Source: Blepharisma stoltei ATCC 30299 (Eukaryota; Protista; Ciliophora). Taken from it: a stretch of DNA of 64,000 bases. Location: positions 1 through 64,000 of the forward strand of contig CBFDEM010000039.1 in NCBI GenBank assembly GCA_965603825.1, in the 5' to 3' direction. The position numbers were made by a program, and so were the translations under genes. This document shows, one piece after another, positions 1 through 26,300 of this stretch. Under the pieces are notes generated by a model that was given only the letters and a program-made list of their open reading frames with translations, had not been told where the DNA came from and searched no databases. Numbering within the stretch: position 1 is the stretch's first letter; each line of letters opens with the position of its first letter.

Positions 1-3000
1 AACACCCTAACACCCTAACACCCTAACACCCTAACACCCTAACACCCTAACACCCTAACACCCTAACACCACCCCTAACACCCTAACACCCTAACACCTA
101 ACACCCTAACACCCTAACACCCTAACACCCTAACACCCCTAACACCCTAACACCCTAACACCCTACACCTCACCCTAACACCCTAACACCCTAACACCCT
201 AACACCCTAACACCCTAACACCCTAACACCCTAACACCCTAACACCCTAACACCCTAACACCCTAACACCCTAACACCCTACACCCTAACACCCTAACAC
301 CCTAACACCCTAACACCCTAACACCCTAACACCCTAACACCCTAACACCCTAACACCCTAACACCCTAACACCCTAACACCCTAACACCCTAACACCCTA
401 ACACCTACACCCTAACACCCTAACACCCTAACACCCTAACACCCTAACACCCTAACACCCTAACACCCTACCCCTAACACCCTAACACCCTAACACCCTA
501 ACACCCTAACACCCTAACACCCTAACACCCTAACACCCTAACACCCTAACACCCTAACACCCTAACACCCTAACACCCTAACACCCTAACACCCTAACAC
601 CCTAACACCCTAACACCCTAACACCCTAACACCCTAACACCCTAACACCCTAACACCCTAACACCTAACACCCTAACACCCTAACACCCTAACACCCTAA
701 CACCCAACCCCTAACACCCTAACACCCTAACACCCTAACACCCTAACACCCTAACACCCTAACACCCTAACACCCTAACACCCTAACACCCTAACCCTAA
801 CCCTAACACCCTAACCCCTAACACCCTAACACCCTAACACCCTAACACCCTAACACCCTAACACCCTAACACCCTAACACCCTAACACCCTAACACCCTA
901 ACACCCTAACACCCTAACACCCTAACACCCTAACACCCTAACACCCTAACACCCTAACACCCTAACACCCTAACACCCTAACACCCTAACACCCTAACAC
1001 CCTAACACCCTAACACCCTAACACCCTAACACCCTAACACCCTAACACCCTAACACCCTAACACCCTAACACCCTAACACCCTAACACCCTAACACCCTA
1101 ACCCTAACACCTAACACCCTAACACCCTAACACCCTAACCCTAACACCCTAACACCCTAACACCCTAACACCCTAACACCCCTAACACCCTAACACCCTA
1201 ACACCCTAACACCCTAACACCCTAACACCCTAACACCCTAACACCCTAACACCCTAACACCCTAACACCCTAACACCCTAACACCCTACACCCTAACACC
1301 CTAACACCCTAACACCCTAACACCCTACCCCTAACACCCTAACACCCTAACACCCTAACACCCTAACACCCTAACACCCTAACACCCTAACACCCTAACA
1401 CCCTAACACCCTAACACCCTAACACCCTAACACCCTAACACCCTAACACCCTAACACCCTAACACCCTAACACCCTAACACCCTAACACCCTAACACCCT
1501 AACACCCTAACACCCTAACACCCTAACACCTACACCTACACCCTAACACCCTAACACCCTAACACCCTAACACCCTAACACCCTAACACCCTAACACCCT
1601 AACACCCTAACACCCTAACACCCTAACACCCTAACACCCTAACACCCTAACACCCCTAACACCCTAACACCCTAACACCCTAACACCCTAACACCCTACA
1701 CCCTAACACCCTAACACCCTAACACCCTAACACCCTAACACCCTAACACCCTAACACCCTAACACCCTAACACCCTAACACCCTAACACCCTAACACCCT
1801 AACACCCTAACACCCTAACACCCTAACACCCTAACACCCTAACACCCTAACACCCTAACACCCTAACACCCTAACACCCCTAACACCCTAACACCCCTAA
1901 CACCCTAACACCCTAACACCCTAACACCCTAACACCCTAACACCCTAACACCCCTAACACCCTAACACCCTAACACCCTAACACCCTAACACCCTAACAC
2001 CCTAACACCCTAACACCCTAACACCCTAACACCCTAACACCCTAACACCCTAACACCCTAACACCCTAACACCCTAACACCCTAACACCCTAACACCCTA
2101 ACACCCTAACACCCTAACACCCTAACACCCTAACACCCTAACACCCTAACACCCTAACACCCTAACACCCTAACACCCTAACACCCTAACACCCTAACAC
2201 CCTAACACCCTAACACCCTAACACCCTAACACCCTAACACCCTAACACCCTAACACCCTAACACCCTAACACCCTAACACCCTAACACCCTAACACCCTA
2301 ACACCCTAACACCCTAACACCCTAACACCCTAACACCCTAACACCCTACACCCTAACACCCTAACACCCTAACACCCTAACACCCTAACACCCTAACACC
2401 CTAACACCCTAACACCCTAACACCCTAACACCCTAACACCCTAACACCCTAACACCCTAACACCCTAACACCCTAACACCCTAACACCCTAACACCCTAA
2501 CACCCTAACACCCTAACACCCTAACACCCTAACACCCTAACACCCTAACACCCTAACACCCTAACACCCTAACACCCTAACACCCTAACACCCTAACACC
2601 CTAACACCCTAACACCCTAACACCCTAACACCCTAACACCCTAACACCCTAACACCCTAACACCCTAACACCCTAACACCCTAACACCCTAACACCCTAA
2701 CACCCTAACACCCTAACACCCTAACACCCTAACACCCTAACACCCTAACACCCTAACACCCTAACACCCTAACACCCTAACACCCTAACACCCTAACACC
2801 CTAACACCCTAACACCCTAACACCCTAACACCCTAACACCCTAACACCCTAACACCCTAACACCCTAACACCCTAACACCCTAACACCCTAACACCCTAA
2901 CACCCTAACACCCTAACACCCTAACACCCTAACACCCTAACACCCTAACACCCTAACACCCTAACACCCTAACACCCTAACACCCTAACACCCTAACACC

Positions 3001-3039
3001 CTAACACCCTAACACCCTAACACCCTAACACCCTAACAC
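1..3039 (+). repeat. Telomeric repeat array (CCCTAACA)n, heterotrich ciliate type
   Basis: Continuous 8-mer tandem repeat from base 1 to ~3039, with the C-rich strand at the 5' end as expected for a left chromosome end. CCCTAACA is the known Stentor/Blepharisma telomere unit. Confidence 0.98.
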
Positions 3040-5968: not shown

Positions 5969-6480
5969 TATTATAATTATCGATCAAAATTACTAAATAA
6001 AAAACTAAGTTAATCAGAAAAATGGCCTAAAAAACAAAAAGAGTAACAGAATTTTTTATTAAACTGTAATAAACGACTAAATGGGTTTTGTCGAACCCGC
6101 TAATTTTTTCTAATATAAAAGCAAACTCATTAAACAAGTAATTTAAATATCAAAACTATTTTGGCTTTTAGCTATAATAGGCTTTTTTCTAATAGTTTTC
6201 TTTGCTCACGAGAGTGAGGGGATTTAACTAATTAATTAATGAAATTCCGCACATAAAACCTTAAAGTCTGGCCTTTTCTTGAAAAAATCTAATTATTCTG
6301 ATATAATTATATGTATTTCGTAGATTGCATTTGAAAGTTATTTCAAATGCTAAAATATTGGTTTTAGGAAAATTGACTATTAGCTATTTATATAGCAAAC
6401 GAAATAAAAAGCAGGACATGAGAGATTATTTATTTCATTATTTCATAAGTTATAAACAGTTTTAGCAAAGGAAGTTATGA

Positions 6481-9400
6481 TTTTTGCTTTTATTGAATCA
6501 TTTTTATACAAGAAGTTAAGGACTACTTCTTTATACTCTCAATAATTTTCCAAAAATTTATTAGATTTGCTACTAGATAGGGTTAGTGTTTTTGCAAGTA
6601 TAAATCTCAGGAGAGCAATGATATGAAATTAACTTAACGCCTGCGCTTTGTATTGAAGCATTTTTTCATATTTAATTTATTTAGTTTTATATATTATGCG
6701 AAAATTAACCTAAAACTATTAACTTATTTATTATAATAGAAACTCTTTAAAATAAGATATAATAAAATTTTATCATCAAAACTTAATAACTTTCTGTGCT
6801 CTTAAAAGAAACATCTAAAATTGGAGCATACTCTCTGCTCAACCGCCTTTCTGGCATACTCTTAGAAATGCTTTGCTTTCTCTCCCCCAAATTAGAGCCC
6901 GATCTTGCAATAAGATTTTTTCTTCTCTTATTCAAAGATTCTCTTCTCCCTTTATTACTAAAATCAAATTCGATAATCCCAGTCTGTATATCCAGAACAT
7001 TCCTCAAATCAGCGCTTCTTAGCTTGATCAACTCATCATCGTTTGCAGAGTCTTGATTTGCAATGTCAATTGACAGGCCATCATGCTTGACAATTCTCTT
7101 CTCTATTTCTTCAAAGACATCAGGGTATTTTTCAAATGACTTCATTAAATCTTTTTTGTCTAAAGAATAAGTATAGCACATACTTTTCGCAATGACTGAA
7201 AATGCCGATTTTACTGATGTCAAAAATTCCAAATCGCCAATAAGAGATCCTTTTCTGAGGGTTTTCAAGATCGTTTTGCCATTGGCAGATATCAAAGCAA
7301 TTGATCCTTCAATAATGAAGAAAATTTCATCACATGATTTTTCTTTATGAATAATATAGTCTTTTGGCAAGAAAAACTTGAACTTTAAATATATTGAAAT
7401 TTGCTCAAAAAACTTTCGAGAATCTTCAAACTGAAAATATGGGACTTTTTCAAGAATAGATTGACTGCATTCGAAAATTATGGACTTTGAAATGTTTCGA
7501 GGCAGGTATAAAAAGAGATTTCTATAGTCAACAGACCCATAGACAACATTCAAAGACGTTGCAAATGCATGATAAGATTCCAATTTCTTTATTAAACTAT
7601 GGAACTTTTCTAAAGAGCTAGCTACACACATTGGAGATTTCAGTTTTTCTATATAATACTTCAAGTCAGATTGAGGAGTGGCAACCGCAGTTGCCATCAG
7701 CCCAAAAATGACAGCGTTCATCATATCTCCGAAGAAAATAAAAAAACGGTTCAAATTCTTTCAGAATCGTTTGCCTCGAGCATGAATCCACCATATCCAG
7801 TGCAAGTGAGAATATTCAGCACATGGAAAAGCGCTCAACTATACTGGTTCCCAGTTTCTGGATCTTGAAGATCATTATCTTTCACCCATGAAGAGTATCT
7901 TTCATTAAGGCTATAATAGAAAAATGAACAGCTCATAAAATGAATTAAGGCCAATACACAAATCATGGTTTCCAAAAATTTCAGTTGGGCTGAAAACTGT
8001 CTCAATAGATTTCTTATTTTAGCGAACAATGCTATAAGTCTAAAGTTAGCCACAAGCCTCAGCAGCCTTAAGAGGGTAATTAACACTATAGGATCTTCAA
8101 TCTGCTCACTCGCAAAAATTATATTGAATGACGATAATGAAAAGATATCTAAAGCAAAGCAAAGAGAAGATTCTTTGTAAACTTTATCTGTCCCACTTCA
8201 AAAAAAATAATTCTTGAAATTAACAAAAATAAAAGCTGCAGAGACCAATAGGCTAATAATTTCTATTCCAAATAGAAATCAATTGTACTCCATTTCAAAC
8301 CCAATTTCTAAGGGCAACTCAAAAAGAATGTAGGTAAGAAAAAACATATATAGAAATGTAACAGAGTATCATGTATTAGATGATAGCTTTAGAAGTTCTT
8401 CAGATATAATTGCTTCCAGCAGCTTCTGGATATTAGCGTAGTATTTTTTTGAGATTTCTGGACAGTTATGAATCTTTGAGTTTATTTTTTCAAAAGAATT
8501 AATGGCTTCATCTAAAGTGCCTGAAGAAAAAATGGCTATTAGCCTATTTTTTGCGAGCTCAGCCATGCTGCTGTACCACTCTGGATAAGCTTCTCTTAGG
8601 TCCTTGATGCATTTTTCTTCTAAAATTCCTATTTTAGATACTTTTGCTGCGATTATATAAGTTGGACTAGATTATATTAGATCTACCATTGTTGGAATCT
8701 CTCCAAAATGATCCCCAGGATAGAGGATTTCTACTGTCTTTTTACCTTTAAAATCGATAACACGCACTTCTCCATCAAGAATGATCAATAAATCATTCCT
8801 TTTTTCTCCTGCGTCAATAGCAGGGTCCCCCACCAAATAAATTTCGACTTTCAGAAGCCTGAGGATTGATTTTGCCAAAGGCTCATTAATGCTCCCATCT
8901 TGATTTTTAAAGATATTAGCATTCTTAACACTTCAGAATATCTATAAAACTGGATATCTGACATCAAGGATGGAGGAAGCTCTTTTAAGATATTTTCATC
9001 ATAAATTCCTTTGCTTGATCTCAATAAGTAGTCAAAATAATCATTTATTTTTTCCATAAAAATACTGCCTAGCTGCTTTTTATCAATAAAATCTTTAACA
9101 TACCAATAGCTATTTTCGAATGTAAATTTTGGATCAGAAGAACAGAGTTCTGCCACAAGTGAAGTTATGCTCCCAAATAAAATTGAGTAGGCAAAAAGTC
9201 CTATTAAAAAGACAAAGCAGTTATATGCTTTCTCAGCAGGCGAATTGCTGACGACCCATCCATACCCAGCATGCGAAACCACAATTGATGACCAATGAAA
9301 TGCGTGTGTATAGACTGTATCCCTAGTAAGGGGTTCAGAGCTGTTAGTCCTATATTGTTCAGGCTGAGGAGATGGGACTCTTGATAATCATGAGTGATTT

Positions 9401-9886
9401 GCATCTTCTCTTTTAGCACATTCTATGAAATAAGATCCACAAAAATGATTTACCATTACATAAACCACCATTACTTCAAATACTCGAAGATAAGTGAAAA
9501 TTTTGAAATGCTTCTTTTTCATATAGAAAAAGAAACCTGCGATGTAATAAAATCCTGTCAGTCTAATTGTTGAAAATATAGCTGCAAGTTCCCTTGGCTC
9601 CGTAAGATCGCTAGATTTAAAAATTAGGGCAAAGGGAATTGCCAGTATTAAATTGTGTATAAACTTATTGAAAGCTCTGCTGGGGTTGGAAAATTGGAAT
9701 CTCTTTTCTTTTGGTAAAGCTGGAATAGATGTGAGAGCACGGCGAAGCTCCAGATAGTAAAGGCTATTGAGAAGATACAGCAAAATAGATAAAATTTCTA
9801 AAGCCAGCAAAGCTGGACTATATTCATATTCAAATGCAATTTGGAGAGGAGTAAAAATGAAATTATATAAGTTCAAGATGAAATAT
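6481..9886. repeat. Segmental duplication, same orientation as ~16177-19621 (includes ~300 bp of 3' flank)
   Basis: Direct sequence comparison. The flank TTTTTGCTTTTATTGAATCA... occurs at both 6481 and ~16177. Confidence 0.92.
6783..9886 (-). pseudogene. 5'-truncated duplicate of the four-repeat CNG channel (repeats III-IV only)
   Basis: Near-identical to 16504-19621. Lesions: 1-nt deletion in an A run at ~7745, AAA>TAA nonsense at 8672-8674, 1-nt deletion at ~8931, and a 9-nt deletion near the stop. Homology ends abruptly at 9886. Confidence 0.9.
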
Positions 9887-10407
9887 TAGCTGATGGGCTT
9901 ACTTATATGGGCCATGCTTTCACTGCTATAGAAAGATTATTATGGAAAATACTTTGAAAATTGGACAAGTTCTAGCCAAGAAAGGATGCAAAGAACGCTT
10001 TGCTGTTGATTATGTAGTAAGACAACAAGAAGAAGGAGGGCTTGAGTTGCTTACGCTGTAGTAATAACTTTAGATGGGATGAGACTTACCATCCTATGAT
10101 TACAGTAAAAATTTAACTGATGCCCAGCTGACTAAAGATGACCTATTATTAGGAGCGGACTATCAAGCAAAATTTTATATAGCCACAAATACTGTTCAAA
10201 ATGACGTCTATACAGGACTTACCTCAACCGATTTCTTAGACTTGGTTAATTCTACAACGAAAATAGATCTGGCCATTTACTATCTGCAATTTCTATATAT
10301 GGAAAATTTGTGTTACAGCAATTAGAAACTCTGCTGAATAAGCGAAGGCTATTTTTGATAGAGCGCTACAAGTATTGGAAAGAGAAGCAAACCAAATCAG
10401 CTCATAG
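9877..10407 (+). pseudogene. Decayed C-terminal part of a PGM1-related (IQCH-like) ATP-grasp peptide ligase
   Basis: Reconstruction across several frameshifts and stops: DEILADGLTYMGHAF / YRKIIMENTLKIGQVLAKKGCKERFAVDYVV / YAV.I.FRWDETYHPMITVK / TDAQLTKDDLLLGADYQAKFYIATNTVQNDVYTGLTSTDFLDLV / ISIYGK.CVTAIRNSAE*AKAIFDRALQVLEREAN. The blocks match, in order, the family consensus as I recall it. Confidence 0.7.
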
Positions 10408-15514: not shown

Positions 15515-16503
15515 TCTTTTAGTTCCCAAAGCTTTATAGCTATAATAATTATAAGCAATAATTTTAAAAAAATAATAAAAGCTTTAGTTATTTTTTTGTT
15601 TTATATTGAAATAGAAATTTATTTCCAACTATTTTTTATAAAATACAATTTCGATGCTTTAGCTGAATACTATTTTTAAAATATCTAATTTATAGAATCA
15701 TAAAATAAACAGATATTTATAATAAATATTGATATCCACGAAAGGAAAACCCCTTTCACGAACAAAGAGCAATTGTTTATATCATAATATTCAAAAAGGA
15801 TCGACTATTTATAGATTGAAGCTAAGCAATAGGGACTTTTATAAATAATTTTGAAATAAGCCTAGGTTCTTCGGCATTTTCCAACGAAGCAATGATAATT
15901 TTTCTCAAAGATATTTTTAAAAATTATGATTTAAAATACTTTGAAACAGCTTAATGCAATTCTATTGTTTTAAAATGTTGTCAAAGGTAAGAAGAAAAAA
16001 AATTGTTTTGAGCAATTAAAATCCAAAGAAGCACCTTTAATTTTATTTAAAAGATATAGTGAGAGCGAGCCATATGCTTATTTTTAAATTGAGGATGGAA
16101 AAGTTTATTATAGAGCAATTTGCAATATAAATAGTTAAAAATTATTTTACAGAGGGTTTTAGGGAGGAACTTATTATTTTTGCTTTTATTGAATCAGTTT
16201 TATATAAGAAGTTAAGGACTATTTTTTATATTCTCAATAATTTTTACAAAAATTTATTAGAATTGCTACTAGATTGTGAGTATTCCTGTTAAGTGTTTTT
16301 GCAAGAATAAATCTCAGGAGAAGTGCAATGGCATGAAATTAACTTTACGCCTACGCTTTGTATCGAAGCATTTTTTCATATTTGATTTATTTGCAAAAAG
16401 CCGTTTTATATTTACATTAAAACCAACCTAAAATATTAACTTATTTATTATAATAGAAATTCTGTAAAATAAGATATAATAAAAAATTTATGATCAAAAA
16501 TAC

Positions 16504-19500
16504 TTAATAACTTTCTTGGTTTTGAGCTGTGCTCTTAAAAGAAACATCTAAAATTGGAGCATACTCTCTGCTCAACCGCCTTTCTGGCATACTCTTAGAA
16601 ATGCTTTGCTTTCTCTCCCCCAAATTAGAGCCCGATCTTGCAATAAGATTTTTTCTTCTCTTATTCAAAGATTCCCTTCTCCCTTTATTACTAAAATCAA
16701 ATTCGGTAATCCCAGTCTGAATATCAAGAACATTCCTCAAATCAGCGCTTCTTAGCTTGATCAACTCATCATCGTTTGCAGAGTCTTGATTTGCAATGTC
16801 AATTGGCAGGCCATCATGCTTGACAATTCTCTTCTCTATTTCTTCAAAGACATCAGGGTATTTTTCAAATGACTTCATTAAATCTTTTTTGTCTAAAGAA
16901 TAAGTATAGCACATGCTTTTTGCAATAACTGAAAATGTCGACTTCACTGACGTTAAAAATTCCAAATCGCCAATAAGAGATCCTTTTCTGAGGGTTTTCA
17001 AGATCGTTTTGCCATTGGCAGATATCAAAGCAATTGATCCTTCAATAATAAAGAAAATTTCATCACATGATTTTTCTTTATGAATAATATAGTCTTTTGG
17101 CAAGAAAAACTTGGGCTTTAAATATATTGAAATCTGCTCAAAAAACTTTCGTGAATCTTCAAACTGAAAATATGGGACTTTTTCAAGAATAGATCGACTG
17201 CATTCGAAAATTATGGACTTTGAAATGTTTCGAGGCAGGTATAAAAAGAGATTTCTATAGTCAACAGACCCATAGACAACATTCAAAGACGTTGTAAATG
17301 CATGATAAGATTCCAATTTCTTTATTAAACTATGGAACTTTTCTGAAGAGCTAGCTACACACATTGGAGATTTCAGTTTTTCTATATAATACTTCAAGTC
17401 AGATTGAGGAGTGGCAACCGCAGTTGCCATCAGCCCAAAAATGACAGCGTTCATCATATCTCCGAAGAAAATAAAAAAAATGGTTCAAATTCTTTCAGAA
17501 TCGTTTGCCTCAAGCATGAATCCACCATATCCAGTGCAAGTGAGAATATTCAGCACATGGAAAAGCGCTCAACTATACTGGTTCCCAGTTTCTGAATCTT
17601 GAAGATCATTATCTTTCACCCATGAAGAGTATCTTTCATTAAGGCTATAATAGAAAAATGAACAGCTCATAAAATGAATTAAGGCCAATACACAAATCAT
17701 GGTTTCCAAAAATTTCAATTGGGCTGAAAACTGTCTCAACCGATTTCTTATTTTAGCAAACAATGCTATAAGTCTAAAAGTAGCCACAAGCCTCAGCAGC
17801 CTTAAGAGGGTAATTAACACTATAGGATCTTCAATCTGCTCACTCGCAAAAATTATATTGAATGGCGATAATGAAAAGATATCTAAAGCAAAGCAAAGAG
17901 AAGATTCTTTGTAAACTTTATCTGTCCCACTTCAAAAAAAATAATTCTTGAAGTTAACAAAAATAAAAGCTGCAGAGACCAATAGGCTAATAATTTCTAT
18001 TCCAAATAGAAATCAATTGTACTCCATTTCAAACCCAATTTCTAAGGGCAACTCAAAAAGAATGTAGGTAAGAAAAAACATATATAGAAATGTAACAGAG
18101 TATCATGCATTAGATGATAGCTTTAGAAGTTCTTCAGATATAATTGCTTCCAGCAGCTTCTGGATATTAGCGTAGTATTTTTTTGAGATTTCTGGACAGT
18201 TATGAATCTTTGAGTTTATTTTTTCAAAAGAATTAATGGCTTCATCTAAAGTGTCTGAAGAAAAAGTGGCTATTAGCCTATTTTTTGCGAGCTCAGTTAT
18301 GCTGCTGTATCACTCTGGATAAGCTTCTCTTAGGTCCTTGATGCATTTTTCTTCTAAAATTCCTATTTTAGATACTTTTGCTGCAATTATATAAGTTGGA
18401 CTAGATTTTATTAGATCTACCATTGTTGGAATCTCTCCAAAATGATCCCCAGGATAGAGGATTTCTACTGTCTTTTTACCTTTAAAATCGATAACACGCA
18501 CTTCTCCATCAAGAATGATCAATAAATCATTCCTTTTTTCTCCTGCGTCAATAACAGGGTCCCCCGCCAAATAAATTTCGACTTTCAGAAGCCTGAGGAT
18601 TGATTTTGCCAAAGGCTCATTAATGCTCCCATCTTGATTTTTAAAGATATTAGCATTCTTAACAGCTTCAGAATATCTATAAAACTGAATATCTGACATC
18701 AAGGATGGAGGAAGCTCTTTTAAGATATTTTCATCATAAATTCCTTTGCTTGATCTCCATAAGTAGTCAAAATAATCATTTATTTTTCCCATAAAAATAC
18801 TGCCTAGCTGCTTTTTATCAATAAAATCTTTAACATACCAATAGCTATTTTCGAATGTAAATTTTGGATCAGAGGAACAGAGTTCTGCCACAAGTGAAGT
18901 TATGCTCCCAAACAAAATTGAGTAAGCAAAAAGTCCTATTAAAAAGACAAAGCAGTTATATGCTTTCTCAGAAGGCGAATTGCTGACGACCCATCCATAC
19001 CCAGCATGCGAAACCACAATTGATGACCAATGAAATGCGTGTGTATAGACTGTATCCCTAGTAAGGGGTTCAGAGCTGTTAGTCCTATATTGTTCAGGTT
19101 GAGGAGATGGGACTCTTGATAATCATGAGTGCATTACATCTTCTCTTTTAGCACATTCTATGAAATAAGATCCACAAAAATGATTTACCATTACATAAAC
19201 CACCATTACTTCAAATACTCGAAGATAAGTGAAAATTTTGAAATGCTTCTTTTTCATATAAAAAAAGAAACCTGCGATGTAATAAAATCCTGTCAGTCTA
19301 ATTGTTGAAAATATAGCTACAAGTTCCCTTGGCTCCGTAAGATCACTAGATTTAAAAATTAGGGCAAAGGGAATAGCCAGTATTAAATTGTGGATAAACT
19401 TATTGAAAGCTCTGCTGGGGTTGGAAAATTGGAATCTCTTTTCTTTTGGTAAAGCTGGAATAGATGTGAGAGCACGGCGAAGCTCCAGATAGTAAAGGCT

Positions 19501-22500
19501 ATTGAGAAGATACAGCAAAATAGATAAAATTTCTAAAGCCAGCAAAGCTGGACTATATTCATATTCAAATGCAATTTGGAGAGGAGTAAAAATGAAATTA
19601 TATAAGTTCAAGATGAAATATATATAATGTTTGGCAGGAGAACTATAGAGATTGAGAAAACTAAGGCTGATATTTAGCCTCTTGACAATAATTTCGCCTG
19701 GTGGAAAGCTTTGGACTTCTCTGGAAGTCATCATTGTTTCGTTTTCAGCTAGCTCAGACTTTGCTTCTTCTTTTAAATTATTAATGACTGCTTCTTCATC
19801 TTTGAGATTATTCGGGAACTCCAGGCTTTTCCTTTTTTGAATGATCATCCTGCTCATGTTTTCTCTTTCGTCAGCCAATTTTCTCACCTTAATAGAGAAC
19901 TCTGGATAAGTCTCCATGACGAAATTAAAATCATGCTTTAAAAGGACAGCAATAGTCAGATCTGTACTTGCCCTCACTGTCGCTCTCCTTGCAGAAGAAA
20001 AATTACTTAAAAGGGCCATTTCTCCAAAAACAGTGCCTTTGGTCAAAGTATTTAGCACAATCCCAGATGAAATGATTTGGACTTCTCCATCAAGAATAAA
20101 ATACATTTGGAGACCAAGTTCGCCTTCAGCTATTATTTGCTCATCTTTACATGCCATTAAAAGCTTGAATTTTTTTACTATAGCTAGAATGGCTCCTTTT
20201 TCTTCTTCTGGGAAAAAGCCTGACTTTATCAAGCCAGAAAATAAATAATACTTTATGTCAGTTCTTAAGGTTTCTGGAAAGTCCTGCATGATTTCTTCGT
20301 CGTCACAGCCTTGGAGCTTGCTTCAGAGTAATTCATAATAATCAAGCACCCTTTTCTTTAGTTCTTTTGAAAGCTTACTATGGTTCATTCAGCTTTTGAC
20401 AGTCTTCAGCTTCTTGGTGTGCTCAGTGTAGGTTTTATAATAATTTGAGGCAAGACTTGCAGCCTCACCAATAATAAATGCTGCTAAAATCATAGAAAAT
20501 ACCATAAACATGATATTCAAACATTTTTCTGCAACAGTAGGCACTGGTACATCTCCATATGCTCCAGATGTGCTTATTGAATATCCGAAATACAGTAAAT
20601 TAACGTATTGATCGTAAATAGGAATATCTGTAATTATTTTTCCAGGTTCATAATAATTATTTAGTGGAAACTGGCTAATAAAGTTTTGATCATTAAATCT
20701 TGCGTCAGGATTAGCCCAGTATTGCAGCTTCCCTAAATAATAAGAGATGCATGCAATAAAATGGCTGTAGTAAATTGTAACAATAAAAAGAAGCAGCAGT
20801 CTAGAATACGACAAGGATGCATGAGAGTGGGATAAAAAACTTTGGGAAAGCTTAAGGATTCGTTTTACTTTGAAGAGTCTCAGAATCCTAAAAAAGGCAG
20901 GCACATATTGAGCTGATCCTAAACCTGTACAGATAAAATCTATTGGAACAAGAGAAACCAAATCTCACCATAAAAATTTATTGACATAATATTTCCTAAT
21001 AGACGGAATATCTTCTATATATGTTCCTAGTTCTGTATATATTGAGGTGTATAAGTGAATAGGTATATCAACTAAATATACAATATAAGCAATAATATCT
21101 ATTGGGAGCCATATTCCATCTGCATGGTATTGAAATGCGATAGCAAAGGGGATATAAAACAGATAAAATGCAAAACTTAAATATAGTAGTAAGCTTCACG
21201 CATAAAAGCAAGGAGAAAACGCATCAATTAAAAATCCTTCATACTGATCATTATTTCTCGCAGAAAAGAATCATCCAATTCAATTTCTCTCACAAGAAAT
21301 TTTCTGATTTTGAGGACTTTCTTCTTCAATACGTGATTTGCCAGGAGATTCTGGGCTTGGGTCTTCAATCTGGTTTTCATCTCCGAAATCCAAATCTTCA
21401 ACTTTTGTAGTCTCCAGTCTTTGGCGTGCAACCCTTATTAAATAATCTTGGTATTCTGGGAACTCATTGAGTATTTTACAAAGATCTTGTTTGCATATAG
21501 ATGATACCATCGCTGCAGTATAAGCTTTTACAGATACAGTTCTCAGCATATCCAATAGAATCCCAATTTCTCCGAAATAATCGCCTTCATGTAAATAAGC
21601 AATTGTTTTATTAGAGTCAGCTGCAATTACTTCAACGATGCCTGTCTTTATAAAGAAAAAATCATCTGGCACATCAGCTTGCCTTATGATATAGTCTCCT
21701 TTCATAAAAATCTGCAGTGTTAAGCACTCAGTCATTGCTAGCACAAATCCAGGATGAGCTGATGAGAATAATTTTATTTTAGGTATAAGGTCTTCATGCA
21801 TAGCTTCAGAAATTTCGTTTTTAAGAGAACATGGCAAGTCTTCTAAGAAATCTACGTCAATTAGGTAAGAAAAGCGGCTTCTAATTGACCAGTAATAAGC
21901 CAAAACTCGATCCTTCAGTCTTGGGCTCAGCTGCCTAAGTTTGCATCATTTTTTGACCCTTTCCAGTCTCTCTTGTGCCTCGAATTCTTTGAGATTTAAA
22001 GTAATCAAAATAAAAACGATGTTCCCAGATATCCAAGCACACATAGAAGCCCCAACAACCATAATAAAAGAAGACGCGTATTTTTCTGCTAGTGTGAATG
22101 GAGTTGTGTCATTATAAGCTATAGTTGACAAGGTGGCAGTCGCCCAAAACACTGCATCTGTATAAATTTCATAATTTTCCGCCCCACCGTCAATCCAAGG
22201 CTGAAGCCAAGTCCCTTGATTTCCACAGTCTATTTCTACTCTTGCCACAAACAGAAGCAGCATCCCACAATAGTGCAACGTCCCTAATAGTAAAATTAAA
22301 TTTTTGCAAATTCTCATAAAATACCCTTGTGGAGCATTTGCAATTATTTCTTGACTCGAAAAGAAAGTTGAGAGCTGGAAAAGTCGCAGAAGTTTGAAAG
22401 ATCTGAGCGCTGCAATAATGTACCCATGCAAATTCATTCCAAAAAGTAACGCCAAAAAGGAGTATGGGACTGAAGACAGACAAAGGGATACTTTTACCAA

Positions 22501-22887
22501 AAGCATTTCCTTCTCATGAAGCATCCACATTCTTGCTCAGATCTCAGAATTTCTGAAAACAAATCGAGAAATCAAATCGATAAGCAGGGCCAGTTCAAAT
22601 ATAATCTCCAAAGCTAGCCAAACTGACCATGGGAATCCTTTGATTCCTAAAAAGTAAGGAACTGTGAAAAGGTTGTATAGGTTCACGGTAAATATTAGGA
22701 ATGACCATTTGTTCTGAAAATCGCTTTTTCTGCTTGATGCAAGCTTTGCAAGGGTTGATTCGAGTTTTTCTGAGCTTGGCTTGAGTCTTTTTTTCTTGGC
22801 TTCTCAGTCTCCGCTAAGTTGTTCAAAGCCAGGGTTATAGTTTCCTTTTTCTATTGAAGCTCTCCTGGCTATTGTTGGGCTAATCAT
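16504..22887 (-). CDS. Single-chain four-repeat (6TM-pore-CNBD)x4 cyclic nucleotide-gated channel, CNGK-like architecture, 2127 aa
   Basis: One uninterrupted 6384-nt frame from ATG 22887 when TGA=Trp. It has four pore segments (TIAYND, SGAYGD, HAGYGW, CTGYGG), each followed by a C-linker and a cNMP-binding domain (GDYFGEI, GTVFGEM, GDHFGEI, GSLIGDL). Confidence 0.92.
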
Positions 22888-23304: not shown

Positions 23305-26300
23305 TTAGCAATTTCAATAAATGTGGGATGCTCGGCATTGAAAAAGCAGAATTTCAATACTAAAAACAAGAAATAATTTAGTGAAAGGCTTTCGATATTT
23401 AATTAGCTTTAAGTTAGTTAGCACAGACCAGCGTAAAGCATAAAAAATCTGTTTAAGGTTGTATAGATAAATTTTCGAAACTATTTATTACCAGGCTTTC
23501 TCTAGGTCTAAAAGTTGCTAATTTTATAACATAATTAATATAAAATGGATAAATTGAGCCTTTTGGAGCCACTGCTTGAAAAAAAGCAAGATTCACCGAA
23601 ATTAAGTTTTCAAACGATGCAAACTTCTGTATCAATGCCTCAGATATTTCACAAAAACGAAAGTGAGCCAGAACTTTTATCCCTGAAGCAAGCAGTTTTT
23701 AATATTTCTTCGGAGTTCGAAAAAAAGCTGCCTCATGCAATCAATATTCCTTTCTGTGTGGAGGAAATGATGTCATTTTCAGATGAAATCCATTACTTAG
23801 TTTCTACTACTAAAGGTAATATTCTTTACTTTAATGCTGTAACTCAGCACTTCGATGAAAAAAATTTTCAGCTGGCTCTTTCTCAATTGTTGTTTTGGAA
23901 AATGAAAGAATTGTTTATTTTTCAAGGGAAAATGAAATTTTCTGCATTAGTATCCCTTCTCTGGAGTTTAAGTCATTTCGAAAGTTTGAGGTTAAGCGTC
24001 GAGTTTGTTTAAAAAATTCTTGGGATAAGAAAAGTTTAATTGCTCATTTTTATGATGAAATTGCTTCGATAAGCTTTTCTAATCCAAAGGAGAAGTAAAA
24101 ACGTTGGTTTCAGGCAAGTTTACCAAAATTGATATATCAAATACAGGCTATTTTGCTCTTATTTCCTCTGAGGACAGGCTAGTGCTTTTGTCTCCTGAAA
24201 GCGAGAAAATTGCTGAAGTAGCGATCGAACCAAAAAGTATTAAACTGAAATTTTCGCCTCAATTATCGATGATTATTATTAGCTACGTCGAAAAAATAGT
24301 TATTTTAAACTCAGGAACTCTAGAAAAGATTCAAGAGATTTTCATGTCTCAAAATAGATTTGGCACCTTCTCCATGACTAATGACGAAAAATTTATTCTG
24401 TTCCCAAATAGAGAAATCCTACATTTCTACGATTTAAGTAGCTTTAGAGACAGAGAAACAGTGAACGTTGATTTTCAAATAATTTTTATTACACAGAGCA
24501 TAAACAATAGCTTAGTTTTTATTAATGGGGCAAATAGACAGTTTTATGTGTTGGCTTTTCCTGTACTTGAATGAGAAAAGTCAACAAATATTACTAGAGC
24601 CTCTAGATAGAACAAGAATGGTAATCAAGAATGATGGTTATTTCAAGACATGAGACTTTGAAACTGATAAAAAAGAGAATATTATTGAAGTCATGCCAAG
24701 AGGCTGAGAAGTTCAAACAGAGAAAATATTTTTGTCTATTGTAGTTCAGATTATATTTTAGTAAAGTAAACATTCCAACTAAAACAGTCTCGACTATTAG
24801 ACAAAAATGCCTATGAAATGATAGAGTCAGCAGCTTTCACTCCTGATGGAAAATATATTATGACTGGAACTAAAAAGAGAGTGTTTTTATGGGACTTTGA
24901 ATCATTGACTATACTTAAAGAATTTAAAGGCAATGATTCCCCTACTTGAATAATGTGCTATTTGGCTAAGTCAAATGCAATAGCAGGAACGGCTGAAAAC
25001 AATACTGTGAGGGTATGGGATATTGAAGCCACACAAAAGAAATTTCAGTAATTACAGAAAATGTTAATACCTATAGTATGAATATAACTCATAACGAAGA
25101 AATGCTTATTTTGGTGCCTGTTGATTCATCGATTAATATTTGGAAATGGAGAAAGAATATTCGTCTTCATACAATAAGAGGTATTAAGCCGTCAATCGTT
25201 AGAATCTCAATAACGGAAGATGATAAATTCATTTTAGGATATACCCGTGATGGGAAGATTCGATTTTCCAGCTTAGAGACTTTCAATCAAATATGTTGGT
25301 ACAAGTTTGAGAGCATGGTTAATGCGAGCTTTGTTAGCGGATAAAATTACATTTGATATTACTATAATGTTAAAACAGAAATCCTCGGGGAAGTGAAAGA
25401 AAAGAAGGCGGCGACCATTAAGAAAACCCATTAAAAGTAAGCAAAGTCACATGTTTAGGCCCAGGGAATGAATATGAGTACATGAAGTACGTTTGCAAGC
25501 TGTTGTAAGGTAAAGAGGTTATTTATAATCTTGAAATGGATGAAGGGCAATCTTCCCTTATATGATTAACACTTTGCATCTTTATGCATACTGTAACTAC
25601 CCCAATAACTTGAAAAAAGCACTTAAAAATAGCTCCTCAATGATTAATAGCGTTTTCAACCAAAATCCTTTATCAATTGCAATATTAAAAGGATTCAAAA
25701 ATTGCATCAACTCAATCATTCTCTCACTTGATAATTATCTAGTTGTTCACATATATACAAATTCAGAGAGCTTAAGGCTAGGAGGAAAACCATCCAAATC
25801 TAATACCTATAGCTAAAAGCCTGTCTAATCGAAGTAGGAGGGTACAGGCAAAGTAAGAAAATCAGATGCAAGGATGGAAACTCTTTTCATGTGACGTAAT
25901 ATTGAGTGCTCAAGAGAGATCCTTAATTAACTTTGCATCTGTTTCTATCTTAAATAGCTTTGGAAAGTAAAATTTCGCACTAATACTATAATCACTAAGT
26001 AAAGATCAGTTCAACTAATATATTCTTTAGCAATTTCAATATATGTGGGATGCTCAGCATTGCAAAAACAGAATTTCAATACTAAATAAAAGAAATAATT
26101 TGGTGGAAGGCTTTCCATATTTAATTAGCTTTAAGCTAGCCAGCACAGTCCAGCGTAAAGCATAAAAAATCTGATTTAAGGTTGTATAGGTAAATCGTCA
26201 AAATTATTTATTAGATAATAAAAATCGGGCTTCTTTAAAAGCTGCTAATTTTATACCATGATTATTATAAAATGGATAAATTGAGCCTTTTGGAGCCACT

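What the first reader, a model, noticed from the sequence alone, without database searches (positions are those of the whole stretch)
16504..22887. Hidden 2127-aa single-chain pseudo-tetrameric cyclic-nucleotide-gated channel with four different, non-canonical selectivity filters
Seen: about seven track fragments form one intronless ORF with (S1-S6 + C-linker + CNBD) repeated four times. The filters differ in each repeat (TIAYND, SGAYGD, HAGYGW, CTGYGG) and none is a clean TVGYGD. The phosphate-binding cassettes of CNBD I (FGEIGILLDMLRT) and II (FGEMALLSNFSSARRA) keep the Arg; III (FGEIPTMVDLIKSSP) and IV (IGDLEFLTSVKST) lack it. S4 of repeat III is nearly uncharged. Known: this architecture is best characterised in animal sperm CNGK channels, which retain GYG-type K+ filters and have non-equivalent CNBDs. 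Inference: this is an asymmetric ciliate channel, possibly not K+-selective and possibly independently concatenated. It is a candidate for the cyclic-nucleotide-dependent sensory responses described in heterotrichs.
Basis: partly seen in the sequence, partly recalled or inferred. Interest (0 to 1): 0.8.

Follow-up and report, generated by a model that had tools for sequence, protein, structure and literature searches.

The report
Ciliate four-repeat cyclic-nucleotide channel gene
This is a real, intact Blepharisma gene for one 2127-residue protein made of four different channel-plus-cyclic-nucleotide-sensor units; it belongs to a ciliate-wide, apparently undescribed family that joined its four units independently of the animal sperm channel CNGK and has largely lost the classical potassium filter.

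Summary
On the minus strand, window 22887-16504 is one 2127-codon frame ending in TAA. Its 16 internal "stops" are all TGA, which is Trp in this organism (Blepharisma stoltei: CCCTAACA telomere, 64 contigs). Pfam finds four cNMP-binding domains and the matching channel domains.

"Hidden" is wrong. The public annotation already calls a 2127-residue product here.

The genome holds two collinear paralogues (58% and 46% identity). It also holds a decaying 3.4-kb partial copy 10 kb nearer the telomere. Four-unit relatives exist in Stentor coeruleus, Tetrahymena thermophila and unnamed assemblies.

In unit trees each ciliate unit position forms its own clade, Tetrahymena included. The CNGK-clade units form a separate clade of their own. 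Positional orthology with that clade is rejected (AU p 0.006 and 3e-58). This supports independent concatenation, before the Blepharisma–Tetrahymena split.

CNGK-clade proteins keep G[YF]G in 16 of 16 units; 14 ciliate proteins keep it in 8 of 56.

In this gene CNBD I and II keep the phosphate-binding Arg, and III and IV do not. S4 of unit III is almost uncharged.

Ion selectivity, ligand gating, transcription and any sensory role remain untested.

The scan's notes hold no such finding on other DNA.

The parts
16504..22887 (-). Complete coding sequence: 2127 codons plus TAA, with 16 in-frame TGA read as Trp; no intron
21313..22740 (-). Unit I (aa 50-525): S1-S6, C-linker, CNBD I. S4 has R/K/R at aa 160-171. 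Filter TIAYND is at 22108-22125. CNBD I is at 21466-21708, with an intact PBC (FGE...LRT) at 21523-21576.
19771..21237 (-). Unit II (aa 551-1039). S4 is the most charged (aa 665-679). Filter SGAYGD is at 20551-20568. CNBD II is at 19906-20148, with the PBC Arg kept (..SARRATVRA) at 19969-20028.
18217..19662 (-). Unit III (aa 1076-1557). S4 is nearly uncharged (one Arg, aa 1192-1203). Filter HAGYGW is at 18991-19008; its His replaces the filter Thr in the alignment to SthK. CNBD III is at 18325-18573; its PBC (18382-18441) lacks the Arg.
16753..18135 (-). Unit IV (aa 1585-2045). S4 is at aa 1694-1706. Filter CTGYGG is at 17521-17538. CNBD IV is at 16861-17112; its PBC (16921-16974) has GD in place of GE and no Arg.
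6459..9886 (-). Partial duplicate of window 16156-19621 (units III-IV plus 3' flank) at 96.1% identity. It carries two 1-nt deletions, a 12-nt deletion and one AAA>TAA change; substitutions are 30 synonymous to 28 non-synonymous. This is a decaying pseudogene fragment, publicly annotated as three short genes.

Best explanation
Window 22887-16504 (minus strand) is an intact, selectively maintained gene of Blepharisma stoltei. Its single 2127-residue polypeptide carries four non-identical units, each made of S1-S6, a C-linker and a CNBD.

Shown:
- The architecture.
- Its conservation in two collinear paralogues and in Stentor, Tetrahymena and other four-unit proteins.
- Position-by-position orthology of the units within ciliates.
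- Separation of the ciliate units from the animal-type CNGK clade.

Inferred:
- The chain folds as a pseudo-tetramer around one pore, as in CNGK, Nav and Cav channels, probably without domain swapping as in other CNBD channels.
- The four P-loops differ (TIAYND, SGAYGD, HAGYGW, CTGYGG). Two lack the first Gly and one the second Gly of GYG. The pore therefore cannot form the fourfold K+ filter, and most likely conducts cations with weak or no K+ selectivity.
- Opening is most likely controlled by cyclic nucleotide binding to CNBD I and CNBD II, which keep the Gly-Glu and Arg of the phosphate-binding cassette. CNBD III and IV would serve as non-binding structural modules.
- The sensors of units I, II and IV keep 3-6 S4 charges and may add voltage modulation. 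The unit III sensor is electrically silent.
- The four-unit fusion arose within the ciliate lineage, before heterotrichs and oligohymenophoreans split, and independently of the CNGK fusion.
For: ORF and genetic code.

Domains. One unit of the paralogue aligns end to end with solved CNG, HCN and SthK channels. The unit III filter aligns to TIGYGD of SthK.

Public gene call of 2127 residues with repeated Ion_trans and cNMP_binding hits.

Selection: 33 synonymous to 7 non-synonymous differences in contigs of other runs, against 30:28 plus frameshifts in the dead copy.

Paralogues of 2127 and 2163 aa are collinear, with filter, PBC and S4 features conserved by position. The 2163-aa one is identical to the database protein P0001 of B. 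stoltei.

Relatives: the library search lists 15 cluster representatives with four full units, and more that are cut short. Named ones include Stentor coeruleus OMJ84131.1 and Tetrahymena thermophila XP_001010072.2.

Trees:
- Ciliate u1, u2, u3 and u4 each form a clade with SH-aLRT 99-100.
- All ciliate units together get 96 (121 rows) and 93 (72 rows).
- CNGK-clade units together get 98 and 100.

AU tests: joining ciliate u1 with CNGK-clade u1 gives p 0.006. Joining all four positions gives p 3e-58.

Filters: G[YF]G is present in 16 of 16 CNGK-clade units and in 8 of 56 ciliate units. CNGK is defined by GYG or GFG pores (PMC4749565).
Against: - No functional datum exists. Selectivity and gating are read from motifs alone, and the literature warns that selectivity cannot be predicted from primary structure (PMC7576140).
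- Transcription as one mRNA is not shown. The four runs are only guessed to be RNA, are kept as short contigs, and none spans the gene.
- Two runs carry a 1-nt deletion variant at 18712, of unknown origin.
- The branch uniting all ciliate units is short, and many rows have deviant composition.
- The AU tests used LG+F+G4 and fast searches, because the site-heterogeneous version did not finish.
- The trees lack Arbacia and Salpingoeca CNGK and named HCN, CNG and KCNH sequences.
Confidence: 0.72

Rival explanations
1. It is a channel of this architecture, but cyclic nucleotides do not gate it. The CNBDs would act as structural or intrinsic-ligand modules, as in KCNH channels or pH-gated zebrafish CNGK. 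Gating would be by voltage (S4 charges in units I, II and IV), pH or another signal.
For: Two of the four CNBDs have lost the PBC Arg. Zebrafish CNGK is activated by alkaline pH rather than by cGMP (PMC4749565). KCNH CNBDs do not gate by nucleotide (PMC7576140). S4 charges are kept in three units.
Against: CNBD I and II keep the full Gly-Glu...Arg cassette in all three paralogues. CNBD I keeps it in all 14 ciliate proteins tabulated, which is the pattern expected for a conserved binding site. The best solved matches of CNBD I are cGMP-dependent kinases and SthK.
Confidence: 0.2
2. It is an orthologue of animal/choanoflagellate CNGK, inherited from one ancient fusion, and still a K+-selective cGMP-gated channel.
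For: It has the same four-repeat 6TM-CNBD plan and a similar length to the CNGK-clade proteins. GYG is kept in units III and IV.
Against: CNGK-clade units form their own clade, with SH-aLRT 98-100. Positional orthology is rejected, with AU p 0.006 and 3e-58. Units I and II lack GYG, whereas CNGK carries GYG or GFG in every repeat. CNBD III, the gating site of sea-urchin CNGK, lacks the Arg here.
Confidence: 0.04
3. The long frame is not one functional gene. It would be four adjacent genes or transcripts, or a pseudogene in decay.
For: No RNA evidence of a single transcript was obtained. A broken partial copy lies nearby. A 1-nt deletion variant at 18712 appears in two runs.
Against: There is no TAA or TAG in 6.4 kb. 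Linkers between units are only about 25-40 residues. The same continuous frame occurs in two paralogues and in Stentor and Tetrahymena proteins. Variation is dominated by synonymous changes, 33:7, unlike the true pseudogene copy. The public gene call is one 2127-residue product.
Confidence: 0.04

Closest known systems
CNGK (tetraKCNG) channels of animal sperm and choanoflagellates
   Same: Both are one polypeptide with four 6TM + C-linker + CNBD repeats and non-equivalent CNBDs. The overall size is about 2000-2400 aa.
   Different: The unit trees and AU tests place the two in separate clades, so the fusions are independent. CNGK keeps GYG or GFG in all repeats and is K+-selective. Here only two repeats keep GYG, and in the ciliate family only 8 of 56 units do. 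In sea-urchin CNGK the third CNBD gates; here the third lacks the Arg.
Uncharacterised four-unit proteins of other ciliates: Stentor coeruleus OMJ84131.1 (2079 aa), Tetrahymena thermophila XP_001010072.2 (3389 aa, 'cation channel family protein'), B. stoltei paralogues on contigs 51 and 23
   Same: Units are orthologous position by position. All share the almost uncharged S4 in unit III, a conserved His before the unit III filter in the heterotrich-like members, and degenerate asymmetric filters.
   Different: This paralogue has additionally lost the Arg of CNBD III. The B. stoltei trio has lost that of CNBD IV, which the 11 other ciliate proteins tabulated keep. The B. stoltei trio keeps GYG in unit III, and two of the three keep it in unit IV, where most others have lost it.
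[quoted passage not shown]
   Same: Both are internal concatenations of 6TM-CNBD units with specialised repeats, and both occur in SAR-group protists.
   Different: Those have two units, not four. That paper reports finding no tandem channels in ciliates. In the trees the unnamed two-unit proteins (P0052, P0058, P0112, P0137) lie outside the ciliate unit clades.
Single-subunit CNBD channels with solved structures (TAX-4, CNGA1/A3, HCN1/4, SthK, KCNH)
   Same: A single unit aligns from S1 to the end of the CNBD, with E about 1e-37 to 1e-28. The C-linker/CNBD and P-loop are in register.
   Different: Those assemble from four separate subunits with identical or near-identical filters. Here four diverged units, only 19-23% identical to each other, are fused in one chain.

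Membership tests
CNBD-channel superfamily (6TM cation channel + C-linker + CNBD) | Voltage-sensor/pore 6TM module (Ion_trans) with a P-loop | tested here: met
   Ion_trans is found in units I, II and IV, and Ion_trans_2 in I, II and III. The unit III pore aligns to the SthK pore. All four units match the unit HMM end to end.
CNBD-channel superfamily (6TM cation channel + C-linker + CNBD) | Cyclic nucleotide-binding domain after S6 | tested here: met
   cNMP_binding occurs four times above the Pfam cut-off. The C-linker + CNBD piece aligns to SthK, HCN and CNG structures.
CNGK / tetraKCNG (animals, choanoflagellates) | Four 6TM-CNBD repeats in one polypeptide | tested here: met
CNGK / tetraKCNG (animals, choanoflagellates) | Canonical GYG or GFG K+ signature in the pore of each repeat (PMC4749565) | tested here: not met
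   Units I (TIAYND) and II (SGAYGD) lack it. CNGK-clade proteins have it in 16 of 16 units.
CNGK / tetraKCNG (animals, choanoflagellates) | Repeats orthologous to the corresponding CNGK repeats (common descent of the fusion) | tested here: not met
   CNGK-clade units are monophyletic at SH-aLRT 98-100. AU rejects the positional clades, p 0.006 and 3e-58. Caveat: the CNGK clade is represented by Tubulanus, Anneissia and two unnamed proteins, not by the type sequences.
CNGK / tetraKCNG (animals, choanoflagellates) | K+-selective current activated by cGMP (or by pH in fish) | not testable with these tools
   Needs electrophysiology.
Ciliate four-unit CNBD channel clade (delineated here) | Each unit is sister to the same-position unit of the Stentor and Tetrahymena proteins | tested here: met
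   The four positional clades have SH-aLRT 99-100, Tetrahymena included.
Ciliate four-unit CNBD channel clade (delineated here) | Nearly uncharged S4 in unit III, and asymmetric, largely non-GYG filters | tested here: met
Two-repeat tandem CNBD channels (dinoflagellates, oomycetes) | Exactly two 6TM-CNBD repeats per chain | tested here: not met
   Four units are present. Two-unit proteins sit elsewhere in the tree.

The most novel reading that the evidence does not exclude
Ciliates built a four-domain cyclic-nucleotide-sensing channel on their own, before their deepest sampled split. They then let the four P-loops diverge away from the K+ filter. This would parallel, inside the CNBD family, the route by which Nav and Cav channels gained asymmetric non-K+ pores. 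The Blepharisma protein would then be a cNMP-gated Na+/Ca2+-permeable (depolarising) channel with only two working ligand sites, and a plausible link between cyclic nucleotides and ciliary or sensory responses.
Probability: 0.3. Interest if true: 0.8.

Novelty: new variant of a known kind. Interest (0 to 1): 0.62.

Why it matters
Four-domain channels with asymmetric pores (Nav, Cav, NALCN) are central to excitability, and how a symmetric tetramer turns into an asymmetric single chain is an old question. CNGK showed that CNBD channels can take the first step, fusion, while keeping K+ filters.

The ciliate family documented here appears to have taken both steps independently. It fused four units. 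It then diverged position by position in filters, voltage sensors and ligand sites, and this pattern is conserved from Blepharisma to Tetrahymena.

The most relevant survey explicitly found no tandem CNBD channels in ciliates (PMC7576140). The family therefore seems unrecognised, although its sequences sit in public databases as hypothetical proteins.

It offers tractable organisms (Tetrahymena knock-outs, Stentor or Blepharisma RNAi). With these one can ask what an asymmetric CNBD pore conducts, how many ligand sites are needed, and whether it underlies cyclic-nucleotide-dependent behaviour in ciliates.

Tried and rejected
- Plus-strand reading of the interval: no long frame. The gene is on the minus strand.
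- Hidden 15/16-nt introns: the two in-frame GTA..TAG 15-mers (19513-19499 and 18479-18465) lie in ungapped, conserved columns of the paralogue alignment. No spliced joint is seen in the laid contigs, and the public product length equals the ORF. Rejected.
They show presence, variants and no joints, but neither transcription nor a single mRNA.
- Origin of the variant contigs: I checked whether they simply come from the 96% partial duplicate. Only 5 of 31 variant sites coincide with it, so mostly not.
- Word search with paralogue P0001 (whole length): only 5 hits, and neither this gene's product nor the contig-51 paralogue's among them. The place look-up later showed that this gene's product is annotated at 2127 residues.
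- AU test under the site-heterogeneous model: did not finish in three tries. It was replaced by LG+F+G4 fast searches. One run failed on thread number.
- PDB search with the unit I S3-S6 piece: nothing at E 1e-8.
- Literature searches for ciliate four-repeat CNBD channels, or for Blepharisma cGMP-gated channels: nothing relevant in the held library. One call failed on a short term.
- Full-length structure model: not attempted. At 2127 aa the protein exceeds the 1200-aa limit, and the product cannot be passed by reference because of its TGA codons.
- Handling of the product: it was never sent to a search tool as one read-through protein. TGA-free pieces and the database paralogue P0001 were used instead. 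Translation under table 4 was done only in local scripts.
Full report
**What is in the sequence**

The interval has no long frame on the plus strand. Its reverse complement, from 22887 down to 16504, is one frame of 2127 sense codons ending in TAA. All 16 internal stops are TGA, and TGG (17 codons) and TGA (16) are used about equally. At this base composition a frame of that length free of TAA and TAG has a chance of about 1e-53.

The window starts with 3 kb of CCCTAACA repeats. The genome has 41.46 Mb in 64 contigs. The published Blepharisma stoltei ATCC 30299 somatic genome has that telomere unit, 64 telomere-to-telomere contigs, UGA reassigned to Trp, and 15-16-bp introns (PMC9942806). A paralogue found later is identical to a database protein named as from B. 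stoltei.

Three observations show that TGA is read as Trp in this very gene:
- 6 of the 16 TGA columns hold W in the Stentor coeruleus orthologue. The rate at TGG columns is the same (8 of 17), against a background W frequency of 1.3%.
- Several TGA columns are invariant W across 13 full-length relatives.
- Codon 1801 is TGG in contigs of other runs.

**Domains and motifs**

The tools take no read-through protein, so I scanned the TGA-free pieces. Pfam gives cNMP_binding four times (E 2.5e-16, 3.9e-15, 2.2e-9, 2.1e-14), Ion_trans in units I, II and IV, and Ion_trans_2 in I, II and III. An HMM built from the twelve units of the three paralogues matches four full units, at aa 50-525, 551-1039, 1076-1557 and 1585-2045.

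One unit of the paralogue aligns from S1 to the end of the CNBD with solved TAX-4, CNGA1/A3, HCN and SthK channels, at E down to 4.5e-37. The unit III pore aligns SHAGYGW to TTIGYGD of SthK.

The four units are only 19-23% identical to one another.

**Is it one intact gene?**

- Only two in-frame GTA...TAG 15-mers exist. Both lie in columns where the paralogues are ungapped and conserved, so they are not introns.
- The public assembly (GCA_914767885.1, contig 39) carries a gene call with a 2127-residue product at this place, with repeated Ion_trans and cNMP_binding hits. The gene is therefore not hidden in the public annotation. It only looks fragmented when TGA is read as stop.
- Four public runs hold the stretch, but their kind is only guessed (RNA?) and they are kept as short low-depth contigs. 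They show no joints and cover most bins, with depth highest at the 3' end. They prove neither transcription nor a single mRNA.
- Their sequence differences are informative. Of the 40 differences listed, 33 are synonymous, and 33 fall at third codon positions. Only 5 of the 31 inside the duplicated segment coincide with the nearby dead copy.
- A 1-nt deletion at 18712, seen in two of the runs, remains unexplained.

**Copies in the same genome**

A 399-residue piece that spans the unit II/III junction finds two collinear loci, on contigs 51 and 23. Under code 4 both are continuous frames of 2127 and 2163 residues, 58% and 46% identical to this gene.

Window 6459-9886 is a 96.1% copy of 16156-19621, that is, units III-IV plus the 3' flank. 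It has two frameshifts, a 12-nt deletion, a nonsense codon, and 30 synonymous to 28 non-synonymous substitutions. This is a decaying subtelomeric pseudogene fragment, and a useful contrast to the constrained parent. Public annotation splits it into three short genes. One of these is database protein P0119.

**Position-specific features**

Across the three paralogues the odd filters are conserved by position:

| Unit | Filter pattern |
|---|---|
| I | T/R-I-[AGS]-Y-N |
| II | G-[AV]-Y-G-D |
| III | H-[AV]-G-Y-G-[WY] |
| IV | T-G-Y-[GS] |

- S4 of unit III has one Arg in all three paralogues. Unit II has the most charges.
- The PBC Arg is kept in CNBD I and II in all three.
- In CNBD III the Arg is lost only in this paralogue.
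- In CNBD IV the Arg is lost in all three, and GE has become GD.

**Relatives elsewhere**

The exhaustive search with the junction-spanning piece returned 9347 hits. Among the best 150 were many proteins of 2000-2400 residues that matched four times and collinearly. Those that carry names are:
- Stentor coeruleus OMJ84131.1 (2079 aa)
- Tetrahymena thermophila XP_001010072.2 (3389 aa, 'cation channel family protein')
- CNGK-like proteins of a nemertean and a crinoid
- four-unit proteins of Phytophthora sojae and Platysulcus

The most relevant survey describes four-repeat CNGK only in animals and choanoflagellates, and two-repeat forms in dinoflagellates and oomycetes. It states that no tandem channels were identified in ciliates (PMC7576140). 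Further searches of the held library found no description of such ciliate channels.

**Origin of the fusion**

I cut the proteins into units and built trees.

With 121 units (IQ-TREE, LG+C20 PMSF, quick search):
- The ciliate units fall into four positional clades, each including Tetrahymena (SH-aLRT 99).
- All ciliate units lie on one side of a branch (96).
- The 19 units of the CNGK-like clade form their own clade (98).

A 72-unit set gave the same picture: positional clades 99-100, CNGK-clade units 100, and the ciliate-versus-rest split 93.

The AU test under the mixture model did not finish. Under LG+F+G4, forcing ciliate unit 1 together with CNGK-clade unit 1 costs 73 log-likelihood units (p-AU 0.006). 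Forcing all four positional pairs costs 237 (p-AU 3e-58).

The simplest reading is two independent fusions. The ciliate one is older than the Blepharisma–Tetrahymena split.

Caveats:
- Several rows have deviant composition.
- The uniting branch is short.
- The CNGK type sequences and named single-subunit families are absent from the set.
- Gene conversion among repeats is not formally excluded.

**What the family looks like**

CNGK-clade proteins (Tubulanus, Anneissia and two unnamed) have G[YF]G in 16 of 16 units. This agrees with the CNGK definition (PMC4749565). In 14 ciliate proteins it survives in 8 of 56 units: 2 in unit I, none in unit II, 3 in unit III and 3 in unit IV.

Unit III keeps a His before the filter in 13 of the 14. 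Several unit I filters carry a Glu. The CNBD I cassette is intact in all 14. CNBD III and IV cassettes are intact in most, but not in this gene.

**How it most likely works**

Shown: the architecture, its conservation and its separate descent.

Inferred:
- The chain forms one pore from four unlike P-loops. Two of them cannot supply the first-Gly backbone conformation of a K+ filter, so K+ selectivity is probably weak or lost.
- Gating probably depends on cyclic-nucleotide binding at CNBD I and CNBD II. The Arg-Thr of CNBD I resembles cGMP-type cassettes, and its best solved matches are cGMP-dependent kinases and SthK.
- CNBD III and IV act as silent modules. The unit III voltage sensor is inert.

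The literature cautions that selectivity cannot be read from sequence alone. I therefore give the functional part about even odds, and the architectural and evolutionary part high confidence. The link to heterotrich photobehaviour rests only on my memory of older work on cGMP in Stentor and Blepharisma, and was not checked here.

**Verdict**

This gene is one of three paralogues of a ciliate-wide, publicly deposited but apparently undescribed family. I class it as a new variant of a known kind (single-chain CNBD channels), and its interest is mainly evolutionary and biophysical.

The scan's notes hold no such finding on other DNA.

Noticed in passing
window 6459-9886 (minus strand): A 96.1% partial duplicate of the channel gene's 3' half plus flank (window 16156-19621). 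It has two frameshifts, one nonsense codon and relaxed substitution (30 syn : 28 nonsyn). Public annotation calls it as three short genes of 263, 305 and 282 aa. The 263-aa ORF (8731-9522) is database protein P0119.
   Followed up: yes
window 9877-10407: The upstream break of the duplicate (9886) abuts the stretch that another first-stage note (s1-634437) reads as a relic of an ATP-grasp ligase. Whether that 'relic' relates to the duplication junction was not examined.
   Followed up: no
window 1-3038: The telomere is 362 exact CCCTAACA units. The channel gene lies 13.5-19.8 kb from its inner end, so it is subtelomeric.
   Followed up: partly
window 18712: Contigs of two of the four public runs lack one base here, inside the coding sequence. 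The other two runs are intact. This is not the deletion seen in the reference pseudo-copy, and its origin is unknown.
   Followed up: partly
window 23305-23490 and about 26027-26213: A 187-nt direct repeat at 89.8% identity, upstream of the gene.
   Followed up: no
G000 contigs, e.g. C53:1492687-1493994, C27:579970-581280, C33:334977-336296: Many loci carry three or four CNBDs spaced about 350 nt apart in one frame. They look like multi-CNBD soluble proteins rather than channels. The first look found 396 CNBD candidates in this 41-Mb genome.
   Followed up: no
P0072 (Phytophthora sojae XP_009518483.1, 2200 aa); P0094 (Platysulcus tardus, 2900 aa); P0116, P0086, P0128, P0161: Four-unit CNBD channel proteins also occur in stramenopiles. 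In Platysulcus and P0116, units 1+3 and 2+4 pair up, the pattern of two rounds of duplication. The 2020 survey reported only two-repeat forms in oomycetes.
   Followed up: partly
P0053 (1040 aa), P0030, P0054, P0059, P0068 (about 800 aa): Shorter database proteins nest inside the ciliate unit III or IV clades. They look like fragments or half-length derivatives of four-unit genes in unnamed assemblies.
   Followed up: no
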